Shown here one piece after another: positions 74-46,234 of a DNA stretch of 64,000 bases (positions are counted from its first letter, which is position 1; each line of letters opens with the position of its first letter). The notes under the pieces are model-generated. The model did not search any database. It was not told the DNA's origin and was given only the letters and a program-made list of their open reading frames with translations. The position numbers and the translations under genes were made by a program. Where the stretch lies: sequence record MN871449.1; one strand, given 5' to 3'.

Positions 74-841
74 ATGGCTAAGTTACACGAAGTATTGGCA
101 GCAGAACCCACTCGCACCAAACAAGTGCAAGTCCTGATCGAAGACGCCAGTAAAAAATTCAATAAATCGGCTGAATATTTCAGCGGGTTTGATAAAACCC
201 TGAAACTGCACGAAGACAACGACGCCAACGCCGCGATCGAAAAAAGCGAAAGTACCAGCAAGGCAGTGATCACCACTGTTGCCGAAACGTTGCAGTACCT
301 CTTCGAATATTTCGCCACCGCAGAAGATCTTCGTCTGCAAAAAGCCCTGACTAACCAGGTCGCAAAAGCAGACATCATGTTCAAAGGCGAAGTCCTCGTT
401 TCTGGAGTGCCGGTAGATGAACTCCTGGGCCTGGAAAAACGCCTGGCGGAACTGCGCAAACTGATCGCCGCGGCCCCTACTCTGGATTCGTCCAAACAAT
501 GGGAACGCGATAGCAACAGCACCTACGGATTCCGTACCGTGACGGACGAAGTCACGACGAAAACCGAGAAAGTGCTCACTCCGGTTATCCTGGCGCCGGC
601 TACCGACCACCACCCTGCACAGGTGAAAGAATCGGAAAGCACCGTCGTAATCGGTAGCTTCACCCGTAAAAGCTATTCCGGCGCCTGCACCCCGATGCAG
701 AAAGCCAACGCACTGCGTGATATCGACGAACTGATCGTTGAAGTCACTAATGCACGTATGCGTGCAAACTGCACCGAAGTTGTTCAGGGTTCTATCGGCG
801 AAGTGCTGACCAACGTGATTCTGAAAAACTTCACTGCTTAA
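74..841 (+). CDS. Conserved hypothetical protein (255 aa; MAKLxxxxAxE...HPAQV family), candidate partner of the downstream structured RNA
   Basis: Clean ORF, AAGGAA RBS, strongly optimised codons (CTG/ATC/ACC/AAC). Motifs A-D-I...VPVxxLLxLEKRL and ATDHHPAQV resemble, from memory, a widespread uncharacterised bacterial/phage family. Confidence 0.85.
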   Translation: MAKLHEVLAAEPTRTKQVQVLIEDASKKFNKSAEYFSGFDKTLKLHEDNDANAAIEKSESTSKAVITTVAETLQYLFEYFATAEDLRLQKALTNQVAKADIMFKGEVLVSGVPVDELLGLEKRLAELRKLIAAAPTLDSSKQWERDSNSTYGFRTVTDEVTTKTEKVLTPVILAPATDHHPAQVKESESTVVIGSFTRKSYSGACTPMQKANALRDIDELIVEVTNARMRANCTEVVQGSIGEVLTNVILKNFTA

Positions 842-1124: not shown

Positions 1125-1245
1125 GAAAGAATTCTAGAGGTCGCGGATTCGAATTCCGCTCTGCCTACCTGGACACATTCACAGAGTGTTTCTTGGAGGC
1201 AGATAGCTCAGCCGGTAGAGCACTAGATTATAAAATAAAACTTCC
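1125..1245 (+). ncRNA. Circularly permuted tRNA-like module 2 (1133-1227)
   Basis: TCTAG-AGGTC-GCGGA-TTCGAAT-TCCGC-TCTGCCT-A (1133-1167), ~29-nt hairpin linker, then AGGCAGA-TA-GCTC-AGCCGGTA-GAGC-A-CTAGA (1197-1227). Acceptor and anticodon stems are perfectly complementary in permuted order. Confidence 0.8.
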
Positions 1246-1393
1246 AATCTTATTCTTAGATAGGTCGCGCTAAATTCTGTTTATAGCTGAATGGCTATGG
1301 GCGGTGTTGGGGATGGTTATATCCTTACCTCCGCCCTTCTTACCACAAAAGTTTCTTTTTCAAAGAGATCACTTTTTGATAAATAAATTAATC

Positions 1394-2990: not shown

Positions 2991-3082
2991 TAATGCACAT
3001 GTTGGGCCAACTTGTCAGCCCCTCAAATTCACTGTGGCGGTTATGCCGCTTGACACCCATACTTTCCTTAAAGGGAATGCAA

Positions 3083-3940
3083 ATGAAGAAACTTGCTTTT
3101 GCCGTGATTTCGGTAGCGTTACTTTGCATGAGTGCTGGCGTATCCGCGGCCGATGGCAAAATTGTTATTACCACCGGTCAACAAGGTTTAACTTATAACG
3201 CCGTTTATGGCGTAAACTTAGCCAGTGCTCTGAGCGAGTACGGTTACCAGACTTCGGTTGTCCCTTCTAAAGGCTCGCTCGATAACCTTGATCGTGTAGC
3301 CTCTGGAGAAGCCACTATCGGGTTTACCCAAGCTGATGCCTATCAGTTCTGGCGTTCGCGTCATGCCAACGAAGCACAGAACGTTGATATCATTGGCGAA
3401 CTGGCCAGTGAGTGCGTCTTTGTCGCCGTCAAGAAAGACGGTAAGGTCACCGGTAAAGGTGATCTAAAAGAAGGCACTAAAATCGCTGTGGGTGAACCTA
3501 CCTCTGGATCTTACGCTTCGTGGCAGTATCTCCAGACATTGGAGAAAAACTACGCGAAAGTTGAAACGTATGCCAAAGGCGGTATCCGTTCTTTGGCTAA
3601 AGTGAATACTGGCGAATACGACGCGTTCCTTTGGGTTTCTGCACCCGACCGGAATAATAAATTCCTGGACGCAGTCATGCAAAAAGACTCGGGACTCGAG
3701 ATCATTGATTTCAACTCCTGGAATGCTGATGCAAAACTGCCGAACGGTAAAGCGGTGTACACGATCGAAAAAGCAACAACCGATTCGGGTATCATTTTCA
3801 ATTCGACCGTAAAAGTCCCTTGCACTAAAACCCTGGTGGTAGCGAATACCTCAGGTGACAGCGACCAGTTCCTTGAAGATGCCTCTACAATTCTTCTGAA
3901 GAACTCTGCGCGCGTTCAGGGTACAGCGTCAGGAAAATAA
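3083..3940 (+). CDS. TAXI-family TRAP transporter solute-binding protein (secreted)
   Basis: Signal peptide MKKLAFAVISVALLCMSAGVSA. TAXI-like motifs ITTGQQGLTY, SKGSLDNL..V.SG...IGFTQAD, IAVGEPTSGS. True start is probably 3083 (AAGGGA RBS), not 2993. Confidence 0.8.
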   Translation: MKKLAFAVISVALLCMSAGVSAADGKIVITTGQQGLTYNAVYGVNLASALSEYGYQTSVVPSKGSLDNLDRVASGEATIGFTQADAYQFWRSRHANEAQNVDIIGELASECVFVAVKKDGKVTGKGDLKEGTKIAVGEPTSGSYASWQYLQTLEKNYAKVETYAKGGIRSLAKVNTGEYDAFLWVSAPDRNNKFLDAVMQKDSGLEIIDFNSWNADAKLPNGKAVYTIEKATTDSGIIFNSTVKVPCTKTLVVANTSGDSDQFLEDASTILLKNSARVQGTASGK

Positions 3941-3943
3941 GTT

Positions 3944-4108
3944 ATGCTGAAAAAGATCGGCTGGTTAATATTACTGGCCGTCATCTTTTTGGTGTTGTTT
4001 CGAATGGCAGGTGTATTGATTGATATTGTCCTGCTTATTATTCTCGCTGGTGCAATTGCCGTTTATGTGCAGCTTGCTTTCAGAAAGAAAAAGAAACAAT
4101 CGAGCTGA
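3944..4108 (+). CDS. Small two-TM membrane protein (54 aa)
   Basis: MLKKIGWLILLAVIFLVLFRMAGVLIDIVLLIILAGAIAVYVQLAFRKKKKQSS; starts 3 nt after the TAXI stop. Confidence 0.75.
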   Translation: MLKKIGWLILLAVIFLVLFRMAGVLIDIVLLIILAGAIAVYVQLAFRKKKKQSS

Positions 4109-4159
4109 CGGTATTTTACAAAGGGTACATTTATGTGCTCTTAATAAAACATCGTTTTC

Positions 4160-4235
4160 GGGTCCATAGCTCAGTGGTTAGAGCAGGCGACTCATAATCG
4201 CTTGGTCGCAGGTTCAAAACCTGCTGGACCCACCA
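4160..4235 (+). tRNA. tRNA-Ile2 (CAU)
   Basis: Cloverleaf, anticodon arm GGCGA-CT-CAT-AA-TCGCT, encoded CCA. D and anticodon arms match recalled enterobacterial ileX. Confidence 0.9.
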
Positions 4236-4240
4236 TATTT

Positions 4241-4325
4241 GCCCGGGTGGTGAAATCGGCAGACACAAGGGATTTAAAATCCCTCGCTTAATCGCGTGCG
4301 GGTTCGAACCCCGCCCCGGGCACCA
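4241..4325 (+). tRNA. tRNA-Leu (UAA)
   Basis: AGGGA-TT-TAA-AA-TCCCT, long variable arm, CCA. Confidence 0.95.
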
Positions 4326-4330
4326 TCTAC

Positions 4331-4405
4331 GTCCTCTTAGCTCAGCAGGATAGCAGCAACGGCCTTCTAAGCCGTAGGTCACTGGTTCGAATCCAGTAGA
4401 GGACA
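4331..4405 (+). tRNA. tRNA-Arg (UCU)
   Basis: ACGGC-CT-TCT-AA-GCCGT; acceptor GTCCTCT/AGAGGAC; CCA not encoded. Confidence 0.9.
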
Positions 4406-4484
4406 CTTCATTATATTCACCCACAGTTTTTGTTGGTCTTCCTATTTCGGTTTAGACCACTAACTTGTATAAGGTAAAAGTAAA

Positions 4485-4826
4485 ATGAATGACGTAACAT
4501 TTGCACACAGTCAAGAAGACATTGATCATATTTCTTATCGTCTTCCTTTAGCCTCTGATCGAACGATTAACGATCCGGCTTATTTGATTAAGTCGAAAGA
4601 CGTTTTCGATATGATCAGGGGAACAGAAGAACTTAATAAGATTGAGAGTTCGAATAATACACGGATAATACATCACTCTCAGATTTACCAGGGCCACTGG
4701 AAAGACCAATTTTTATCGCTGATCAATGCGGCCGCTAAACGCAACGGTTGGAATACCGTCACCCAATATGGCGGACAAATTCTTTTGGTTGCTGATATCT
4801 GGTTATCTGTAGGGAAATTCCGGTAG
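4485..4826 (+). CDS. Hypothetical protein (113 aa)
   Basis: ORF with AAGGT RBS between the two tRNA clusters. Confidence 0.65.
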   Translation: MNDVTFAHSQEDIDHISYRLPLASDRTINDPAYLIKSKDVFDMIRGTEELNKIESSNNTRIIHHSQIYQGHWKDQFLSLINAAAKRNGWNTVTQYGGQILLVADIWLSVGKFR

Positions 4827-5023
4827 GCAATCAAAATTTAAGTAATTCAATATCTTATGAACAAAGATTGTAACTTTCTCTCCGGAATGTTAAGACAACA
4901 ATCAACCTGTTCAAATATTGCGCAAGTCTCAGAGGGAAACCATACGCCCTGAGAAGAAACTAATAGTGCTCCTTGGCCCGAGAGTAAAGAATGCAGCGCT
5001 GAAATAATCGGGTCCCAAATTCA

Positions 5024-5107
5024 GGGGAAGTTCCAGAGTGGTCAAATGGGTCAGACTGTAAATCTGCTGCTTCGGCTTCGGTAGTTCGAATCTACCCTTC
5101 CCCACCA
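5024..5107 (+). tRNA. tRNA-Tyr (GUA)
   Basis: TCAGA-CT-GTA-AA-TCTGC, long variable arm, CCA. Confidence 0.93.
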
Positions 5108-5114
5108 GTTTTAT

Positions 5115-5189
5115 AGAAGCGTAGCCAAGCGGTTAAGGCCCCGGGCTTTGATCTCGGTACCCCTAGTTCGAATCTAGGCGCTTCTGCCA
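5115..5189 (+). tRNA. tRNA-Gln (UUG)
   Basis: CCGGG-CT-TTG-AT-CTCGG; acceptor AGAAGCG/CGCTTCT; G73; CCA. Confidence 0.92.
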
Positions 5190-5194
5190 TTAGC

Positions 5195-5270
5195 GCAAGT
5201 ATAGCTCAGTCGGTAGAGCGATGTCCTTCCAAGTCATAGGTCGCGAGTTCGAACCTCGCTGCTTGCTCCA
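5195..5270 (+). tRNA. tRNA-Gly (UCC)
   Basis: ATGTC-CT-TCC-AA-GTCAT; U73; CCA. Confidence 0.92.
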
Positions 5271-5277
5271 GATACAA

Positions 5278-5379
5278 TGTTCTCGTAGCTCAACTAGGTA
5301 GAGCGCCTGCATCGGCGGCCACTGCGCCGCCAACTGCTTAGCAGGAGGTTGCCGGTTCAAATCCGGAAGGGAACAACCA
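5278..5379 (+). ncRNA. tRNA-like RNA with an extended anticodon arm (30-nt structured loop)
   Basis: Acceptor TGTTCTC/GGGAACA, A-CCA, D-arm GCTC/GAGC, T-loop TTCAAAT. CCTGC/GCAGG encloses ATC-GGCGGC-CACTGC-GCCGCC-AACTGCTTA. Confidence 0.8.
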
Positions 5380-5386
5380 AACAAAA

Positions 5387-5461
5387 GGTGCTATCGTCTA
5401 GCGGAAAGGATACCTCCCTGTCACGGAGGAGACCGGAGTTCAATTCTCCGTAGCACCGCCA
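5387..5461 (+). tRNA. tRNA-Asp (GUC)
   Basis: CCTCC-CT-GTC-AC-GGAGG; G73; CCA. Confidence 0.93.
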
Positions 5462-5467
5462 AATAAT

Positions 5468-5541
5468 GACTCTTTAGTTCAGTTGGTTAGAACGGCAGCC
5501 TGTTAAGCTGTAGGTCCCAGGTTCAAGTCCTGGAAGAGTCG
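5468..5541 (+). tRNA. tRNA-Asn (GUU)
   Basis: GCAGC-CT-GTT-AA-GCTGT; acceptor GACTCTT/AAGAGTC; G73; CCA not encoded. Confidence 0.9.
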
Positions 5542-5550
5542 CATTTTAAT

Positions 5551-5640
5551 AGAGAGTTGGATGAGCGGTTTAAGTCGCTCCCCTGCTAAGGGAGTGTATC
5601 CGAAAGGGTACCGAGAGTTCGAATCTCTCACTCTCTGCCA
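5551..5640 (+). tRNA. tRNA-Ser (GCU)
   Basis: CTCCC-CT-GCT-AA-GGGAG, long variable arm, G73, CCA. Confidence 0.95.
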
Positions 5641-5893
5641 AATAATGACATCTTACTTAGACTAAAGGCAGGGGTTAACCAGGCGACTTAATGTTGCGGA
5701 GAGTTAATCTTGGCCTAAGGCAAAAGTTGACCTCGGCGTGCTGAGGGGGATGTCTCCTTGTTATCCCTACGTAAATCATCGACGAATAAATGAGCCGTTA
5801 AATACGACCCATTTAAGCATAATTGCATCTCGGCTAAACACCGGGCGCTGCTGGTGTAGATGATACTCATTGAGTGCTAGGGAACCTATTCAA
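5641..5893 (+). ncRNA. Unclassified structured RNA within the tRNA array
   Basis: Nested helices 5765-5769/5878-5882, 5775-5780/5859-5864, 5793-5797/5831-5835, 5798-5803/5811-5816, 5838-5844/5851-5857; hairpin 5731-5746. No ORF of 60 aa or more. Confidence 0.55.
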
Positions 5894-6001
5894 TGATAGG
5901 CTAGCTTAAAGGTAAAGCGCGGGCATTAGGCCCCCTCTCATACGAGGGGCGCCTTAACATGGGAGCCTGAGATAGCCGTTCGATTCGGTACCTATCAACC
6001 A
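5894..6001 (+). ncRNA. tRNA-like RNA with an extended anticodon arm (40-nt structured loop)
   Basis: Acceptor TGATAGG/CCTATCA, A-CCA, D-arm GCTT/AAGC, T-loop TTCGATT. CGGGC/GCCTG encloses ATT-AGGC-CCCCTC-TCATAC-GAGGGG-C-GCCT-TAACATGGGA. Confidence 0.8.
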
Positions 6002-6005
6002 AAGT

Positions 6006-6703
6006 TGGACTTAAAAGAGAGAGTGCGAGTTAATGGGTCGCACAACGCCACTAGGCGAGACACCGGAGTCAGTGGTGGCGCTAGTAGAAGAAGTCAGTTA
6101 CCGGTATGCGGCCGCAACAAATTAACTGATACCCATTCTACACTTTTAAAGTCCACGTAACCTTTACAATACTGCTCTAGTCAAGTGATATTGTTTACAG
6201 AGAGTGCAGGTTCGACTCCTGCTCGGTAGTAGAGGCTCGGTAGGAAGGGAGTTCGGAATCGTATCCGAATGATTTGTCCAATAAGCAATAACTTATTGGT
6301 AACTCTCGTGAGACAAAGACTTCGGCGACCCGCCGGTTAAACGCGCCGCGGAATCGGCCGAGGGGTACTAATTATGACGCCTGTCAATTTCGGCGGCCTA
6401 CGCCTTAGAGCGAAAATAGGCGGCCATAGACCATAGACCTCAGCCGGGGATTCCGGCGAAAGAGGTGCAAGGAGCCGGCAAAAATGTCCGGGGGCGTCAC
6501 CCTATTCGATCCATTTCTCCAACGTAGAAGGGATCGGGTATTAAAAATCTGGAAATTAAGCTAACTCGTATAGCCGAGAATAAACATGTTTCGGTGGCGA
6601 CCTTAACATGAAAAGGATGATGTGCGATAAGTCATTTATGAGCTAAACACTGAGATCCTTTTGACTATTAGTCAGTACGAGAGAGGGTCGAAAGACCCTC
6701 TCT
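6006..6703 (+). ncRNA. Large unclassified structured RNA region (one or several RNAs)
   Basis: Closed domain 6006-6155, isolated T-arm 6206-6222, many helices from 6252 to 6662, terminal hairpin 6680-6703. No ORF of 60 aa or more in ~700 nt. Confidence 0.6.
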
Positions 6704-6708
6704 TTATG
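6680..6708 (+). terminator. Hairpin ending the RNA array
   Basis: AGAGAGGGTC-GAAA-GACCCTCTCT followed by TTATG. Confidence 0.7.
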
Positions 6709-6764
6709 CTGTTAATTTTATGAACCATACATTTTCTTTTTCATCAATTGAAGGCGCAAAAAAA

Positions 6765-7114: not shown

Positions 7115-7591
7115 ATGGAATTTGTTTTATTACTGGGTCCTGAAGATCCAGAAGCTATCAAGTATGAAAAAGAACTTTTAGACATGTTTCATGTCATGGA
7201 TAAAAACGAAGCGACTTTATGGAAATCGAGAAGTAATCTCGACATCCTCACTAACGAGTTAAAAACAGAAAGACTCATTGATCGTTGGACTGACCAAACT
7301 AACATTCTTCTGGTAATAGATAAAGAGAATGTCGTAGGGTTTGTTGAGTATATACCACCTGTCGTAAACGGAAGTGTTACATGGATGTCGATTAATTATC
7401 TGTACATCAAACGACATTATCGAAAAATGGGCTACGGGAAGGCACTGGTAAAACAAGTTAGAATGTTTGCTAAGCACCTCTCAGTTGACCAAGTTAGCCT
7501 GTCTGTCCACGTCTCTAACGTAAATGCCCAGAAATTCTATGAGTCTCAGGGTTTCCTGGAACAAACCAAATACATGTGCGTAAAACCATGA
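7115..7591 (+). CDS. GNAT-family N-acetyltransferase
   Basis: Motif A LYIKRHYRKMGYGKAL and motif B VHVSNVNAQKFYESQGF; AGGAG RBS. Confidence 0.9.
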   Translation: MEFVLLLGPEDPEAIKYEKELLDMFHVMDKNEATLWKSRSNLDILTNELKTERLIDRWTDQTNILLVIDKENVVGFVEYIPPVVNGSVTWMSINYLYIKRHYRKMGYGKALVKQVRMFAKHLSVDQVSLSVHVSNVNAQKFYESQGFLEQTKYMCVKP

Positions 7592-34657: not shown

Positions 34658-34756
34658 TTAAACATGCATACTTCCAAACCTACCGTCCCTGGTGGACGGT
34701 AGGTTTGTATGACTTTTCTTCCTAACACGCCTTCTCCCGGGAAAGGAATACTTAAA

Positions 34757-36196
34757 ATGACCAAGATTAAAAACGTCCTCGCACGACGTCCACAAGTCTC
34801 GATTGAGTCCGCCGTTGTAGAACCAGAAAAACAATCCGTCGAATCGTTCGACGAACGTCCCATCGGCTTCGACTCCAATGAAAGCGAATTACCCGACGAA
34901 ATTGATAACGCTCTTGATCCGGTAGATGCCGACATCATGGGTTTGACGTCTTTGACTGAAACCACGAATAAATACCAAGCGGTTTACGACGCCATCGCGC
35001 CAGAGATCAATGCAGGGCAATCTCTCTCTACAGAAGCCGCCGTGATTCTGAATATTTTCTCGAACAGCATGGGTATCCAAACTGCCCGTGCCTTTGTCGC
35101 CAATGAGTCTGCGTCGCATATCACGCCGTATGAATCGAAAGTTGCACTGGAAGGGATTAAAGAAGTCCTTCGTGAATGGTGGCAGAAATTCTCCGCCTTT
35201 TTGAAAGAAGCCCGCAGTCGGTTCGGTCACTGGCTTGAAAACGCCTTTAACGGCGCTGAACAACTTAAGAGTTTAGCTGAACAACTCAAAGAAGAAGTCA
35301 CCCACGCCAGGCCCGGCTCTGGTGACATTGAATTCTCGGAGAAAGGTAAACTACTCATCGAGGGTAACTGGCCTAATGTTCCGAATGAAATGATGCGTCT
35401 GGGTCGTATCTCCGATATGGTATTGAACAATGTCATCGAAGATACCTACAGCAACGCACAGGCGGTAGCAAGCGCAATTGGTAGCTACCAGCCGGGCGGC
35501 GAAGCTTCGTTCAATCAATTGTTTAAAACGCTCGCCGAAAACGTAAAACATCCGTCCGAAGCGATTGCAGGTGAACTCACCATTCGTTTACCAGGCGATG
35601 CTAATGAAGTGTTACTCAAAGGCGACGATTCTGTTAATGCCGTCGTTGAAGCGTCCGAACCTTTCTTAGGTAACGCGCGATTAGCGGCAGTTGTGGTCAC
35701 CGTTAACCCGACAGAAAATCCGATCGAAGGAATCAGAGCGCTGGAAAAGGCGTATAAGTTCTCCAAGGTTATAGTAGTTGATCTGTCGGCAGAGAATAAA
35801 CTTTGGAACTCACGTAACCACCAGGTTGAGGACAAAGAAGTCTCACGCTGTTCCCCGACAGACGCCGCGAAGATCGCAGATGGTGCCTTGGCGGTAGCGA
35901 ACGCGATGTTAAAACTGAAGAACTCGGGAAGTAAGAAGTCCCAAGTCGATCGCGCTGTTGATCAGGCTGGCCAGAACATCGCTAACATGAACATTAACGA
36001 AACCAGCGAAGGCGGCGGCAGCATTTCCTCAGCGTTACGCTCCATCGTTTCTACCGTTGCAAGTATGCCATCCTCAGTGACCAGTAGCCTAGTGAGTTTC
36101 TTCGGCTCCACTTCGCGTGCTGCGTTGAAATACGCTAAAGCTTCCCTTGAAGGCGAGAAGCAAGACGAAAACGAAAATAGCCAGAAACCAAATTAA
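34757..36196 (+). CDS. Internal head (ejection) protein paralog
   Basis: AAGGAA RBS before ATG 34757; SIE/SVE/STE/ALE sites then 'EGIKEVLREWWQKFSAFLKE'. Confidence 0.75.
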   Translation: MTKIKNVLARRPQVSIESAVVEPEKQSVESFDERPIGFDSNESELPDEIDNALDPVDADIMGLTSLTETTNKYQAVYDAIAPEINAGQSLSTEAAVILNIFSNSMGIQTARAFVANESASHITPYESKVALEGIKEVLREWWQKFSAFLKEARSRFGHWLENAFNGAEQLKSLAEQLKEEVTHARPGSGDIEFSEKGKLLIEGNWPNVPNEMMRLGRISDMVLNNVIEDTYSNAQAVASAIGSYQPGGEASFNQLFKTLAENVKHPSEAIAGELTIRLPGDANEVLLKGDDSVNAVVEASEPFLGNARLAAVVVTVNPTENPIEGIRALEKAYKFSKVIVVDLSAENKLWNSRNHQVEDKEVSRCSPTDAAKIADGALAVANAMLKLKNSGSKKSQVDRAVDQAGQNIANMNINETSEGGGSISSALRSIVSTVASMPSSVTSSLVSFFGSTSRAALKYAKASLEGEKQDENENSQKPN

Positions 36197-45979: not shown

Positions 45980-46060
45980 TGAGATTAGAAACCATTTGGT
46001 TACACTGGTGAGGGTTTCCTCACCAGTGGACTTTTTATTTCTTAATGAGGAATCACGAGA

Positions 46061-46234
46061 ATGAGCGATAATAAGGTATCTTACCATATCGACGCTGGCG
46101 GTGAGGTTGAACTCTCTCCACGTGCCTACCAGGAAACCGTGTTACAGTATCGCTTCGGTTATACCGAAGCTCAACTGGCCAATATGTCTGACAATCAAAT
46201 CGCACAACGGTATGCAGAACTAACTGAAGGATAA
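46061..46234 (+). CDS. Small hypothetical protein (57 aa; not in the ORF track)
   Basis: GAGGAA RBS; MSDNKVSYHIDAGGEVELSP...ELTEG*. Confidence 0.7.
   Translation: MSDNKVSYHIDAGGEVELSPRAYQETVLQYRFGYTEAQLANMSDNQIAQRYAELTEG

What the first reader, a model, noticed from the sequence alone, without database searches (positions are those of the whole stretch)
5278..5379. tRNA-like gene whose anticodon loop is replaced by an internal loop plus a GC hairpin
It has intact acceptor, D and T arms and an encoded CCA, inside a tRNA array. The Ala-like anticodon stem CCTGC/GCAGG encloses 30 nt: ATC / GGCGGC-CACTGC-GCCGCC / AACTGCTTA. There is no G3.U70 pair. The insert is too short for a group I intron, and removing it does not give a normal YU-NNN-R loop. 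Inference: a non-decoding tRNA mimic, for example a decoy for anticodon nucleases (PrrC, RloC, PARIS AriB type) or for synthetases/T-box-like sensors.
Basis: partly seen in the sequence, partly recalled or inferred. Interest (0 to 1): 0.75.

Follow-up and report, generated by a model that had tools for sequence, protein, structure and literature searches.

The report
Anticodon-less tRNA look-alike in phage
A Klebsiella jumbo phage keeps, inside its tRNA gene cluster, a strongly conserved tRNA-shaped RNA gene (and a second one 500 bases on) whose codon-reading loop is replaced by a hairpin. It almost certainly cannot read codons and probably acts as a tRNA mimic; what it binds is unknown.

Summary
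Window 5278-5379 (phage KpXa_1, MN871449) is a tRNA-shaped gene: Rfam tRNA 38.9 bits against a gathering score of 29, missed by default ARAGORN. It has a 7-bp acceptor stem followed by A-CCA, a normal D arm, a 4-bp T arm and an Ala-type anticodon stem that encloses 30 nt (ATC / 6-bp GC hairpin / AACTGCTTA).

- **Sister element:** a second gene of the same plan (E2, 5894-6001) was not in the finding.
- **Conservation:** both are 97-99% conserved in relatives whose flanking genes are only 76-82% identical. All five substitutions in the inserts fall in unpaired bases.
- **No decoding loop:** no single excision gives E1 a U33/purine-37 loop in any relative. There is no bulge-helix-bulge or group I signature, and no Ala, Ser or Pro identity set.
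- **No ligase partner:** RtcB ligase is absent from this genome and from most E1 carriers.
- **Relatives:** Machinavirus phages carry other cloverleafs in the same region, one with its anticodon arm capped by UUCG.

Best reading: a non-decoding tRNA mimic. The partner is unknown and the decoy role is untested. Splicing is unlikely but not excluded, because no usable tRNA-seq exists.

The parts
5278..5379 (+). E1: the whole tRNA-like gene (102 nt)
   Evidence: Rfam tRNA 38.9 bits. ARAGORN -i gives 5278-5379. Annotated 'tRNA-OTHER' at the same place in phage MJ359.
5278..5284 (+). Acceptor stem, 5' strand (TGTTCTC)
   Evidence: Pairs 7/7 with 5369-5375. G5285 faces A5368 as a G.A layer, which is G-C in Centimanus.
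5288..5304 (+). D arm (GCTC / 9-nt loop with GG / GAGC)
   Evidence: Sequence, Rfam alignment, invariant in relatives.
5306..5310 (+). Anticodon stem, 5' strand (CCTGC)
   Evidence: Pairs with 5341-5345. Identical to the bacterial tRNA-Ala(UGC) stem (my own knowledge). Holds C28-U-G30.
5311..5313 (+). 3-nt 5' side of the internal loop (ATC; ACC in FBKp24)
5314..5331 (+). GC hairpin: 6 bp with a 6-nt loop CACTGC (CACTGT in Centimanus)
   Evidence: Fold. Unique in the window. The stem is invariant and the loop varies.
5332..5340 (+). 9-nt 3' side of the internal loop (AACTGCTTA; first base is C in all other phages)
   Evidence: ARAGORN takes its last 7 nt as the 'loop', CTGCTTA.
5341..5345 (+). 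Anticodon stem, 3' strand (GCAGG)
5346..5350 (+). Variable loop (AGGTT)
   Evidence: Rfam alignment.
5351..5367 (+). T arm: G.A + CCGG/CCGG stem, loop TTCAAAT
   Evidence: In Centimanus, 49-65 becomes A-T and the loop becomes ATCATAC, with positions 54 and 58 swapped.
5369..5375 (+). Acceptor stem, 3' strand (GGGAACA)
5376..5379 (+). Discriminator A and encoded CCA
   Evidence: In the sister element E2, conservation in relatives stops just after CCA.
5894..6001 (+). E2: sister tRNA-like gene of the same plan. It has a 40-nt insert: ATT / 10-bp hairpin with one bulge / TAACATGGGA
   Evidence: Rfam tRNA 34.4 bits. ARAGORN -i. Cloverleaf as the minimum-energy fold. 97-100% conserved. 'tRNA-OTHER' in MJ359.
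4160..5640 (+). Surrounding array of nine ordinary tRNA genes (Met/Ile2-CAT, Leu, Arg, Tyr, Gln, Gly, Asp, Asn, Ser)
   Evidence: ARAGORN and Rfam.

Best explanation
E1 is a functional, non-decoding tRNA mimic.

**Shown**
- It is a conserved gene for an RNA that keeps the whole tRNA body: acceptor stem with A-CCA, D arm with the elbow nucleotides, T arm and anticodon stem.
- Its anticodon loop is replaced by a three-part module: a 3-nt strand, a GC hairpin and a 9-nt strand.
- A sister gene, E2, has the same plan.

**Inferred**
- It is transcribed with the tRNA array.
- It is cut out by RNase P and the 3' trimming enzymes like any tRNA, which gives a stable RNA of about 102 nt ending in CCA.
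- It cannot be used by the ribosome because no 7-nt U-turn loop exists.
- It is probably not charged because no identity set is present.
- It therefore acts by occupying a protein that recognises the tRNA body or acceptor end.

**Best guess for the partner (low confidence)**
The partner may be a host tRNA-directed defence or toxin enzyme, for example one that cuts the anticodon stem or modifies the CCA end. In that case the remodelled arm makes the RNA a poor substrate but a good binder.
For: - **tRNA body:** the tRNA model matches above threshold and the cloverleaf is intact.
- **E1 loop:** no excision gives U33 plus purine-37 in E1.
- **Relaxed tRNA rules:** FBKp24 has C at the candidate U33. 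Centimanus has an A54/T58 T loop together with two mismatch-to-pair changes, so the fold is kept while elongator rules are relaxed.
- **Conservation:** E1 is 98% and E2 97% identical in FBKp24, where flanking genes are 76-82% identical. That is 5 changes in 210 nt against about 38 expected.
- **Inserts are constrained too:** 4 changes against 12.6 expected, P=0.005. All 5 insert substitutions lie in unpaired bases.
- **Retention:** E1 is kept in all 13 records although Gly, Asp, Ser, Arg, Tyr or Gln are lost in some.
- **Related phages:** syntenic regions of Machinavirus phages hold other cloverleafs with non-decoding anticodon arms. These include a 7-bp stem capped by UUCG, a 12-nt loop, and a CCCGGCG loop.
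- **Unrelated viral contigs:** tRNA arrays on these also hold members with long anticodon arms.
- **No splicing partner or signal:** RtcB is absent from this genome.
- **RNA data:** metatranscriptome contigs carry E1 and E2 unspliced.
Against: - No direct data exist on the mature RNA, its 3' end or its charging. The RNA contigs cross tRNA borders, so they are precursor or DNA and say little about the mature form.
- E2 can formally be read as an interrupted tRNA with a canonical loop: TGG, or TAG with the break at 37/38.
- All variable sites of E1 and E2 lie inside the 'introns' that ARAGORN proposes, as splicing would also predict, although the numbers are too small to count.
- No partner protein has been identified.
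- A stoichiometric decoy is a weak defence against a catalytic nuclease.
- Loop-reading anticodon nucleases would not see this RNA.
Confidence: 0.5

Rival explanations
1. The tRNA body is only a chassis. It provides RNase P and 3' processing and gives stability, as in the engineered 'tRNA scaffold'. The active part is the inserted module: the hairpin plus the 9-10-nt single strand, acting as a small regulatory RNA seed or a protein aptamer.
For: - The inserts are as conserved as the body.
- The 3' single strands are almost invariant, with 1 change in 19 nt.
- E1 and E2 share the same layout: a 3-nt strand, a hairpin with a 6-nt loop, and a 9-10-nt strand.
- E2 lies within a 1.1-kb conserved noncoding stretch, where a processing handle would make sense.
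Against: - No target is known. The seeds are too short for a meaningful search.
- The payloads of E1 and E2 are unrelated in sequence.
- In Machinavirus relatives the anticodon arms differ completely while the acceptor and T parts persist. This points to the body rather than the payload.
Confidence: 0.2
2. E1 and E2 are interrupted tRNA genes. A protein endonuclease (host or phage) removes the insert and a ligase (RtcB or other) joins the halves to give a decoding tRNA.
For: - ARAGORN -i models them as Ser(gct) with a 23-nt intron and Pro(tgg) with a 33-nt intron.
- E2 gives canonical loops, one of them at the classical 37/38 site.
- Some relatives encode RtcB: Pfam 402 bits in FBKp24.
- Observed variation lies inside the putative introns.
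Against: - No excision gives E1 a purine-37 loop, and FBKp24 lacks U33 for most cuts.
- The proposed break points differ between E1 (31/32) and E2 (33-35). Neither lies in a bulge-helix-bulge, and the 37/38 site of E2 falls inside a helix.
- The body lacks the long arm needed for Ser. I judge the acceptor end to be unlike bacterial tRNA-Pro (my own knowledge).
- A true tRNA-Ser(GCT) is already in the array.
- RtcB is in only 5 of 13 carriers and not in this genome.
- No splicing endonuclease is known in bacteria or their phages (my own knowledge).
- In 185,579 genomes, this body type with a large insert occurs only in archaea, always with the anticodon first and the intron after 37.
Confidence: 0.12
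3. E1 is a decaying tRNA pseudogene that picked up a hairpin insertion and is carried along without function.
For: - Phage tRNA arrays turn over fast. Neighbours are lost and HNH genes inserted in relatives.
- The T stem and the base of the acceptor stem carry mismatches.
- Fold z-scores are unremarkable.
Against: - Conservation equals that of true tRNAs and far exceeds that of flanking genes.
- For the sister element E2, conservation ends sharply just after CCA.
- Mismatches are repaired to pairs in Centimanus.
- E1 is retained in all 13 records.
- A second element of the same design exists.
Confidence: 0.08

Closest known systems
YrlA-type bacterial and phage Y RNAs (Rfam RF02553; PMC4201824)
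   Same: Non-decoding RNAs with a domain that mimics the tRNA D arm, T arm and acceptor, and that tRNA enzymes handle. Two such modules appear to lie 4 kb upstream in this same window.
   Different: - YrlA is circularly permuted: the acceptor is closed by a loop and the ends lie in the 'anticodon' stem. It has no free CCA end.
- YrlA is defined by a Ro60 partner encoded within about 4 kb.
- E1 has normal tRNA topology and an open acceptor with CCA. No Ro60 gene was seen among the window ORFs tested.
Phage T4 species 1 and 2 RNAs (rnaC, rnaD)
   Same: Small stable RNAs of unknown function encoded at the end of a phage tRNA cluster. rnaC ends in a T arm plus an acceptor-like helix.
   Different: There is no sequence relation. 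The T4 RNAs are not cloverleafs and fail the tRNA model. E1 passes it.
tRNA genes with archaeal or eukaryal protein-spliced introns
   Same: A short insert (13-40 nt) in the anticodon loop that folds into a helix. ARAGORN reports both kinds in the same way.
   Different: True cases found here start with a normal Y-U-anticodon-purine and break after position 37, within a bulge-helix-bulge. E1 does neither.
Phage rescue tRNAs that escape anticodon nucleases (T5 tRNA-Lys against PARIS, PMC11464382; tRNA-Tyr against a retron effector, PMC11555353; phage tRNA-Thr against P2 Old, PMC12445682; loop mutations, PMC10264068)
   Same: Phage-encoded, located in tRNA arrays, and altered in the anticodon arm. 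E1 keeps the paired CNG motif that P2 Old cuts.
   Different: Those are working tRNAs that replace the cleaved host tRNA. E1 cannot decode, so it could only act as a binder or competitor. No such case is reported in the papers I searched.
Non-translating pseudo-tRNAs and viral tRNA-like RNAs: Bacillus cereus tRNA-Other (PMC3399842), and murid herpesvirus 4 vtRNAs and mascRNA (my own knowledge)
   Same: tRNA-shaped RNAs, processed by tRNA enzymes, not used in translation, and with regulatory or handle roles.
   Different: They come from different organisms, are unrelated in sequence, and none carries a hairpin module in place of the anticodon loop.

Membership tests
tRNA (Rfam RF00005), structural membership | Score at or above the curated gathering threshold, with all four arms aligned | tested here: met
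   38.9 bits against 29, model positions 1-71. E2 scores 34.4 bits.
Decoding elongator tRNA | 7-nt anticodon loop with U33 and purine 37 | tested here: not met
   The loop is 30 nt. None of the 8 possible single excisions gives U33 plus R37 in any of 4 variants.
Decoding elongator tRNA | Identity elements for a synthetase (Ala G3.U70; Ser long variable arm; Pro G72/A73 with G35 and G36) | tested here: not met
   Position 3-70 is U-A. The variable loop is 5 nt. Position 72 is A or C depending on register. The rules themselves come from my own knowledge.
Decoding elongator tRNA | Aminoacylation and ribosome use | not testable with these tools
   Needs charging assays or tRNA-seq.
tRNA with a group I intron | Self-splicing core of about 200 nt or more, inserted in the anticodon loop | tested here: not met
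   The insert is 30 nt. No Rfam intron or ribozyme family was reported across 5200-5460 at E up to 1.
tRNA with a protein-spliced (bulge-helix-bulge) intron | Two 3-nt bulges separated by a 4-bp helix, with normally the anticodon first and the break at 37/38 | tested here: not met
   There is one 3-nt strand directly on the anticodon stem, facing 9 nt. No 4-bp central helix exists. Real examples are given for contrast.
tRNA with a protein-spliced intron | A splicing endonuclease and ligase available | tested here: inconclusive
   No RtcB in this genome by tblastn. No endonuclease search was possible over the whole genome. Host enzymes were not examined.
YrlA / Y RNA | Permuted tRNA-like module closed by a long terminal stem, and a Ro60 (TROVE) gene nearby | tested here: not met
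   E1 has normal topology. The only YrlA match near it scores 22.5 bits against 69 and straddles the Gly/E1 border. No TROVE hit in the 20 window ORFs scanned.
tmRNA | tRNA-like ends plus a tag reading frame | tested here: not met
   ARAGORN finds no tmRNA. A 30-nt insert cannot hold a tag frame.
tRNA-Sec | 8/5 acceptor/T helix, long variable arm, UCA anticodon | tested here: not met
   Centimanus E1 reaches 8+5 pairs, but there is no long arm and no UCA.
Decoy for tRNA-directed defence nucleases | Binds or titrates the nuclease and protects the phage | not testable with these tools
   The only lead is the paired CNG at 28-30/40-42, as in P2 Old substrates (PMC12445682).

The most novel reading that the evidence does not exclude
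Jumbo phages of enterobacteria carry a hitherto undescribed class of anticodon-less tRNA mimics, encoded among their tRNA genes. These keep the tRNA body and CCA end but replace the decoding loop with a stable hairpin module. They would serve as RNA anti-defence factors that jam host enzymes which attack or sense tRNAs through the body, anticodon stem or 3' end. The alternative would be equally new: these are the first protein-spliced tRNA introns in a bacterial virus.
Probability: 0.25. Interest if true: 0.85.

Novelty: new variant of a known kind. Interest (0 to 1): 0.6.

Why it matters
Why phages carry tRNA genes is an old question, and the current answer is that they replace host tRNAs destroyed by defence nucleases. 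A conserved array member that cannot decode does not fit that answer. It points to a second use of the tRNA shape by phages: binding rather than decoding.

If E1 and E2 block a tRNA-directed defence or toxin, they would be RNA-based counter-defence factors. They would also be a ready probe for finding that enzyme in Klebsiella.

There is a practical point too. Such genes are silently dropped (FBKp24, Centimanus, KpLz-2_45), labelled 'tRNA-OTHER' (MJ359), or misread as suppressor tRNAs. Phage tRNA censuses therefore miss or mislabel them.

Tried and rejected
- **Splice-site enumeration.** I listed every single excision of the inserts. None is canonical for E1, and several are for E2, but so many cuts pass the U33/R37 test for E2 that it discriminates little.
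- **Bulge-helix-bulge, group I and small ribozymes.** None fits. A Pistol match at 6564-6608 scores 19.5 bits against 34.5 and is taken as chance.
- **RtcB as a dedicated partner.** Rejected because it is present in only 5 of 13 carriers. Its neighbours in FBKp24 gave no Pfam or PHROG hit.
- **Mobile hairpin element.** The 18-nt hairpin occurs only once in the window. The hairpins of E1 and E2 are unrelated.
- **Closer or intron-less homologues.** blastn finds E1 and E2 only in the 13-record clade. A pattern with E1's own ends found nothing in JGI metagenomes.
- **Ala-type pattern.** It found only E1, one high-GC viral contig (L057) and archaeal intron tRNAs. The bacterial hits in the genome collection were coding sequence, not tRNA.
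- **Upstream solute-binding gene as an anchor for relatives.** It returned mostly unrelated contigs at about 74% identity, probably a host-derived gene.
- **Public RNA runs.** Only assembled contigs from wastewater were available. They give presence but no information on the mature form.
- **Orthology of E1 to the pSal-SNUABM-04 element with loop CCCGGCG.** They share a leader and D arm, but the anticodon stem looks Pro-like rather than Ala-like. Left open.
- **Literature.** I found no description of such elements.

Full report
**Source and setting**

The window is the first 64 kb of the 304-kb jumbo phage KpXa_1 (MN871449, filed as 'Serratia phage', host Klebsiella pneumoniae); bases 4000-6000 match it at 100% identity, with the same coordinates. 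It belongs to a clade of 13 records, 11 distinct phages, that includes FBKp24 (Maaswegvirus), KpLz-2_45 (Siatvirus), MJ359, LPKP23 and Centimanus. ARAGORN and Rfam find nine ordinary tRNA genes at 4160-5640. The finding lies between tRNA-Gly and tRNA-Asp, with the usual 7-8-nt spacers.

**The observation**

It is correct. Rfam's tRNA model matches 5279-5375 at 38.9 bits (gathering 29) and places about 28 extra bases in the anticodon loop. Default ARAGORN misses the gene, but with introns allowed it reports 5278-5379. Read from T5278:

- the acceptor stem is 7 of 7 paired and is followed by A and CCA;
- the D arm keeps A14, G18, G19 and A21;
- the anticodon stem CCTGC/GCAGG encloses ATC, a 6-bp GC hairpin with a 6-nt loop, and AACTGCTTA;
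- the T stem has four Watson-Crick pairs plus a G.A, and another G.A sits under the acceptor stem.

There is no G3.U70. None of the eight possible single excisions gives a loop with U33 and a purine at 37, in any of the four sequence variants.

**A sister element**

MJ359's annotation lists two 'tRNA-OTHER' genes. The second corresponds to window 5894-6001, which I call E2. It scores 34.4 bits on the tRNA model and folds as a cloverleaf at minimum energy. It has the same design as E1:

- an acceptor stem that starts with T-A and is followed by A-CCA;
- a 4-bp T stem;
- an anticodon stem CGGGC/GCCTG enclosing ATT, a 10-bp hairpin with a 6-nt loop, and TAACATGGGA.

E1 is therefore not a one-off accident.

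**Conservation**

Against FBKp24, the flanking protein genes are 76-82% identical and some adjoining noncoding DNA is absent. E1 is 98% and E2 97% identical, like the true tRNAs. That is 5 changes in 210 nt where about 38 would be expected at 18% divergence. Within the two inserts alone there are 4 changes against 12.6 expected, P=0.005.

All five substitutions seen in the inserts across the clade lie in bases predicted to be unpaired. One anticodon-stem G.U in E2 becomes G-C. In E2, similarity stops just after the CCA.

Centimanus has a cluster of changes in E1's T arm that turn the 49-65 and 7-66 mismatches into pairs. They also swap T54/A58 to A54/T58. The fold is preserved while elongator-tRNA rules are relaxed.

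E1 is present in all 13 records, although Gly (FBKp24), Asp and Ser (Centimanus), or Arg, Tyr and Gln (KpLz-2_45) have been lost. A pseudogene is therefore unlikely.

**Is it an interrupted tRNA?**

ARAGORN's intron models are Ser(gct) with 23 nt removed at 31/32 for E1, and Pro(tgg) with 33 nt removed for E2. Several points argue against splicing.

- E1 never yields a purine at 37, and FBKp24 has C where most cuts need U33.
- The proposed break points differ between E1 and E2.
- Neither RNA forms a bulge-helix-bulge.
- The bodies lack Ser or Pro identity features, and a genuine tRNA-Ser(GCT) is already present.
- In 185,579 species genomes and the JGI metagenomes, the same Ala-type body with an 18-45-nt insert occurs as a tRNA only in archaea. 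There it always starts with a normal loop and breaks after position 37. The only other cases are E1 itself and one high-GC viral contig, L057.
- FBKp24 does encode an RtcB ligase, at 402 bits on Pfam. But tblastn finds it in only five of the 13 E1-bearing records and not in KpXa_1.

Points that keep splicing alive:

- E2 can give canonical loops, one of them at the classical 37/38 site.
- All variation lies within the putative introns.

The only RNA data available were Logan contigs of wastewater runs. Two metatranscriptomes cover the tRNA and ncRNA parts but not the intervening ORFs. They carry E1 (5283-5397) and E2 (5900-6038) unspliced, with no joint inside. These contigs cross gene borders, so they reflect precursor RNA or DNA rather than the mature form.

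**Wider comparison**

Machinavirus jumbo phages (pSal-SNUABM-04, Erwinia phage Parshik) share the gene order of a solute-binding protein followed by a tRNA array. Their arrays contain further unannotated or oddly annotated cloverleafs:

- one whose anticodon arm is a 7-bp stem capped by UUCG (L211 4601-4676);
- one with a 12-nt loop that ends in ACCA (L211 4942-5019);
- one of 103 nt that ends in ACCA (L211 4459-4561);
- one with loop CCCGGCG, whose Parshik counterpart instead has TTAATTA plus a long extra arm.

In these elements the acceptor and T parts persist while the anticodon arm is free to change. That is what a non-decoding role predicts.

A generic pattern scan of viral contigs mostly returned eukaryote-type tRNA-Tyr introns. 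It also returned about a dozen tRNA-like genes with long anticodon arms. Some sit inside arrays of up to 18 tRNA genes (L157, L158, L177), and one is a continuous helix capped by UUCG (L079).

**Mechanism**

What is shown is the anatomy, the conservation and the lack of a decoding loop.

What is inferred is the following. The RNA is matured like a tRNA and accumulates as an L-shaped molecule ending in CCA. It is invisible to the ribosome and probably to synthetases. It works by binding something that recognises the tRNA body, anticodon stem or 3' end.

One concrete lead concerns E1's stem, which carries C28-U-G30 paired with C40-A-G42. This is the pseudo-palindromic CNG pair that the P2 Old nuclease cuts on both strands, and tRNA-Ala is among Old's substrates (PMC12445682). 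E2 has such a pair shifted by one position. However, the motif is expected in roughly a fifth of random stems, and here it is inherited from the Ala-type stem. It is a lead, not evidence.

The rival that the tRNA body is merely a processing and stability chassis for the hairpin-plus-strand module cannot be excluded.

**Known relatives in kind**

- YrlA-type Y RNAs (PMC4201824).
- T4 species 1 and 2 RNAs.
- Pseudo-tRNAs such as B. cereus tRNA-Other (PMC3399842).
- Working phage rescue tRNAs (PMC10264068, PMC11464382, PMC11555353).

E1 fails the defining features of each of these (see Membership tests). My literature searches found no description of such elements.

**Verdict**

This is a real, conserved and unusual gene. 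It is best described as a non-decoding tRNA mimic and as a new variant of a known kind. The decoy function remains a hypothesis. Interest 0.6.

Noticed in passing
window 5894-6001 (+): Second tRNA-like gene (E2) of the same design as the finding. It has a 40-nt anticodon 'loop' containing a 10-bp hairpin and scores 34.4 bits on the Rfam tRNA model. It is 97-100% conserved, and its apical loop changes from TCATAC to CCATGC in FBKp24 and Centimanus.
   Followed up: yes
window ~898-1085 and 1127-1254 (+): Two circularly permuted tRNA-like modules in the order anticodon-stem strand, T arm, closed acceptor hairpin, D arm, anticodon-stem strand. This is the YrlA (Y RNA) topology. The second scores 37.6 bits on Rfam YrlA (below the gathering score of 69). 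In the first, the acceptor hairpin loop begins ACCA. Both are at least 97% conserved in FBKp24 and Centimanus, and a strong terminator follows at 1394-1421. No TROVE/Ro60 gene was found among the window ORFs tested.
   Followed up: partly
FBKp24 46041-46120 (L058), equivalent to window ~1091-1170: The 'suppressor tRNA-Sup-TTA' reported for phiKp24 (also 'tRNA-Stop'/'tRNA-TERM' in Centimanus and LPKP23) is a weak ARAGORN/tRNAscan model with a mismatched acceptor and a poor D arm. It borrows the T arm of the second Y-like module and is probably a mis-call.
   Followed up: partly
window 5641-6719: A 1.1-kb stretch with no convincing ORF lies between the array and a terminator. It is conserved in the clade. 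It contains a perfect T-arm-like GCAGG-TTCGACT-CCTGC at 6207-6223 and a possible 132-nt acceptor/T module at 6098-6229. Wastewater metatranscriptome contigs cover 6300-6483. No Rfam family fits.
   Followed up: partly
window 6003-6159: This segment is absent in FBKp24 and Centimanus. A wastewater contig also skips it (joint 6000 to 6160). It is an indel directly after the CCA of E2.
   Followed up: partly
FBKp24 174955-176199 (L059), not in the window: An RtcB RNA ligase is present in only 5 of the 13 records of the clade (FBKp24 x2, KpSz_1, KpZh_1, KpZh_LPS_45) and absent from KpXa_1. Its nearest relatives are in Erwinia jumbo phages, at 71% identity. The neighbouring 563-aa protein has no Pfam or PHROG match.
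   Followed up: partly
L057 5152-5244 (-) (IMG/VR 3300009095_000880; same contig as L203): A high-GC viral contig carries an Ala-type tRNA body (Rfam 58 bits, G3-C70) with a 27-nt anticodon 'loop' containing a CCCCC-GCGA-GGGGG hairpin. It is the only other non-archaeal case of this body type found.
   Followed up: partly
L211 4459-4561, 4601-4676, 4942-5019, 5025-5103; L212 4974-5067: Machinavirus phages (pSal-SNUABM-04, Parshik) have several unannotated or mis-annotated cloverleaf RNAs in the syntenic tRNA region. They include one with a UUCG-capped anticodon arm and two that end in ACCA. Parshik annotates a CDS (gp18) over part of this region.
   Followed up: partly
L079, L157, L158, L163, L166, L177 (IMG/VR contigs): Other viral contigs, three of them (L157, L158, L177) with several to 18 tRNA genes in the fetched stretch, contain tRNA-like genes whose anticodon arm is a long hairpin. 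L079 has a 5-bp anticodon stem extended by a 15-bp helix capped by UUCG.
   Followed up: partly
L003 1760-2221; L004 1925-2380: HNH endonuclease genes are inserted in the tRNA array of Centimanus (between Met and Leu) and KpLz-2_45 (replacing Arg, Tyr and Gln). The array is a hot spot of turnover.
   Followed up: no
window 2993-3940 (+): A solute-binding protein gene (Pfam NMT1_3; annotated 'TAXI family' in FBKp24) lies just upstream of the array. It has about 74% identical relatives on dozens of unrelated 'viral' contigs, so it looks host-derived. A homologue sits in the same position in Machinavirus phages.
   Followed up: partly
window 34709-36196 (+), 7115-7591 (+), 74-841 (+): Pfam hits seen while scanning: a phiKZ-like internal head protein, a GNAT acetyltransferase about 0.4 kb downstream of the ncRNA stretch (absent from MJ359 and Centimanus), and DUF7873.
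   Followed up: no
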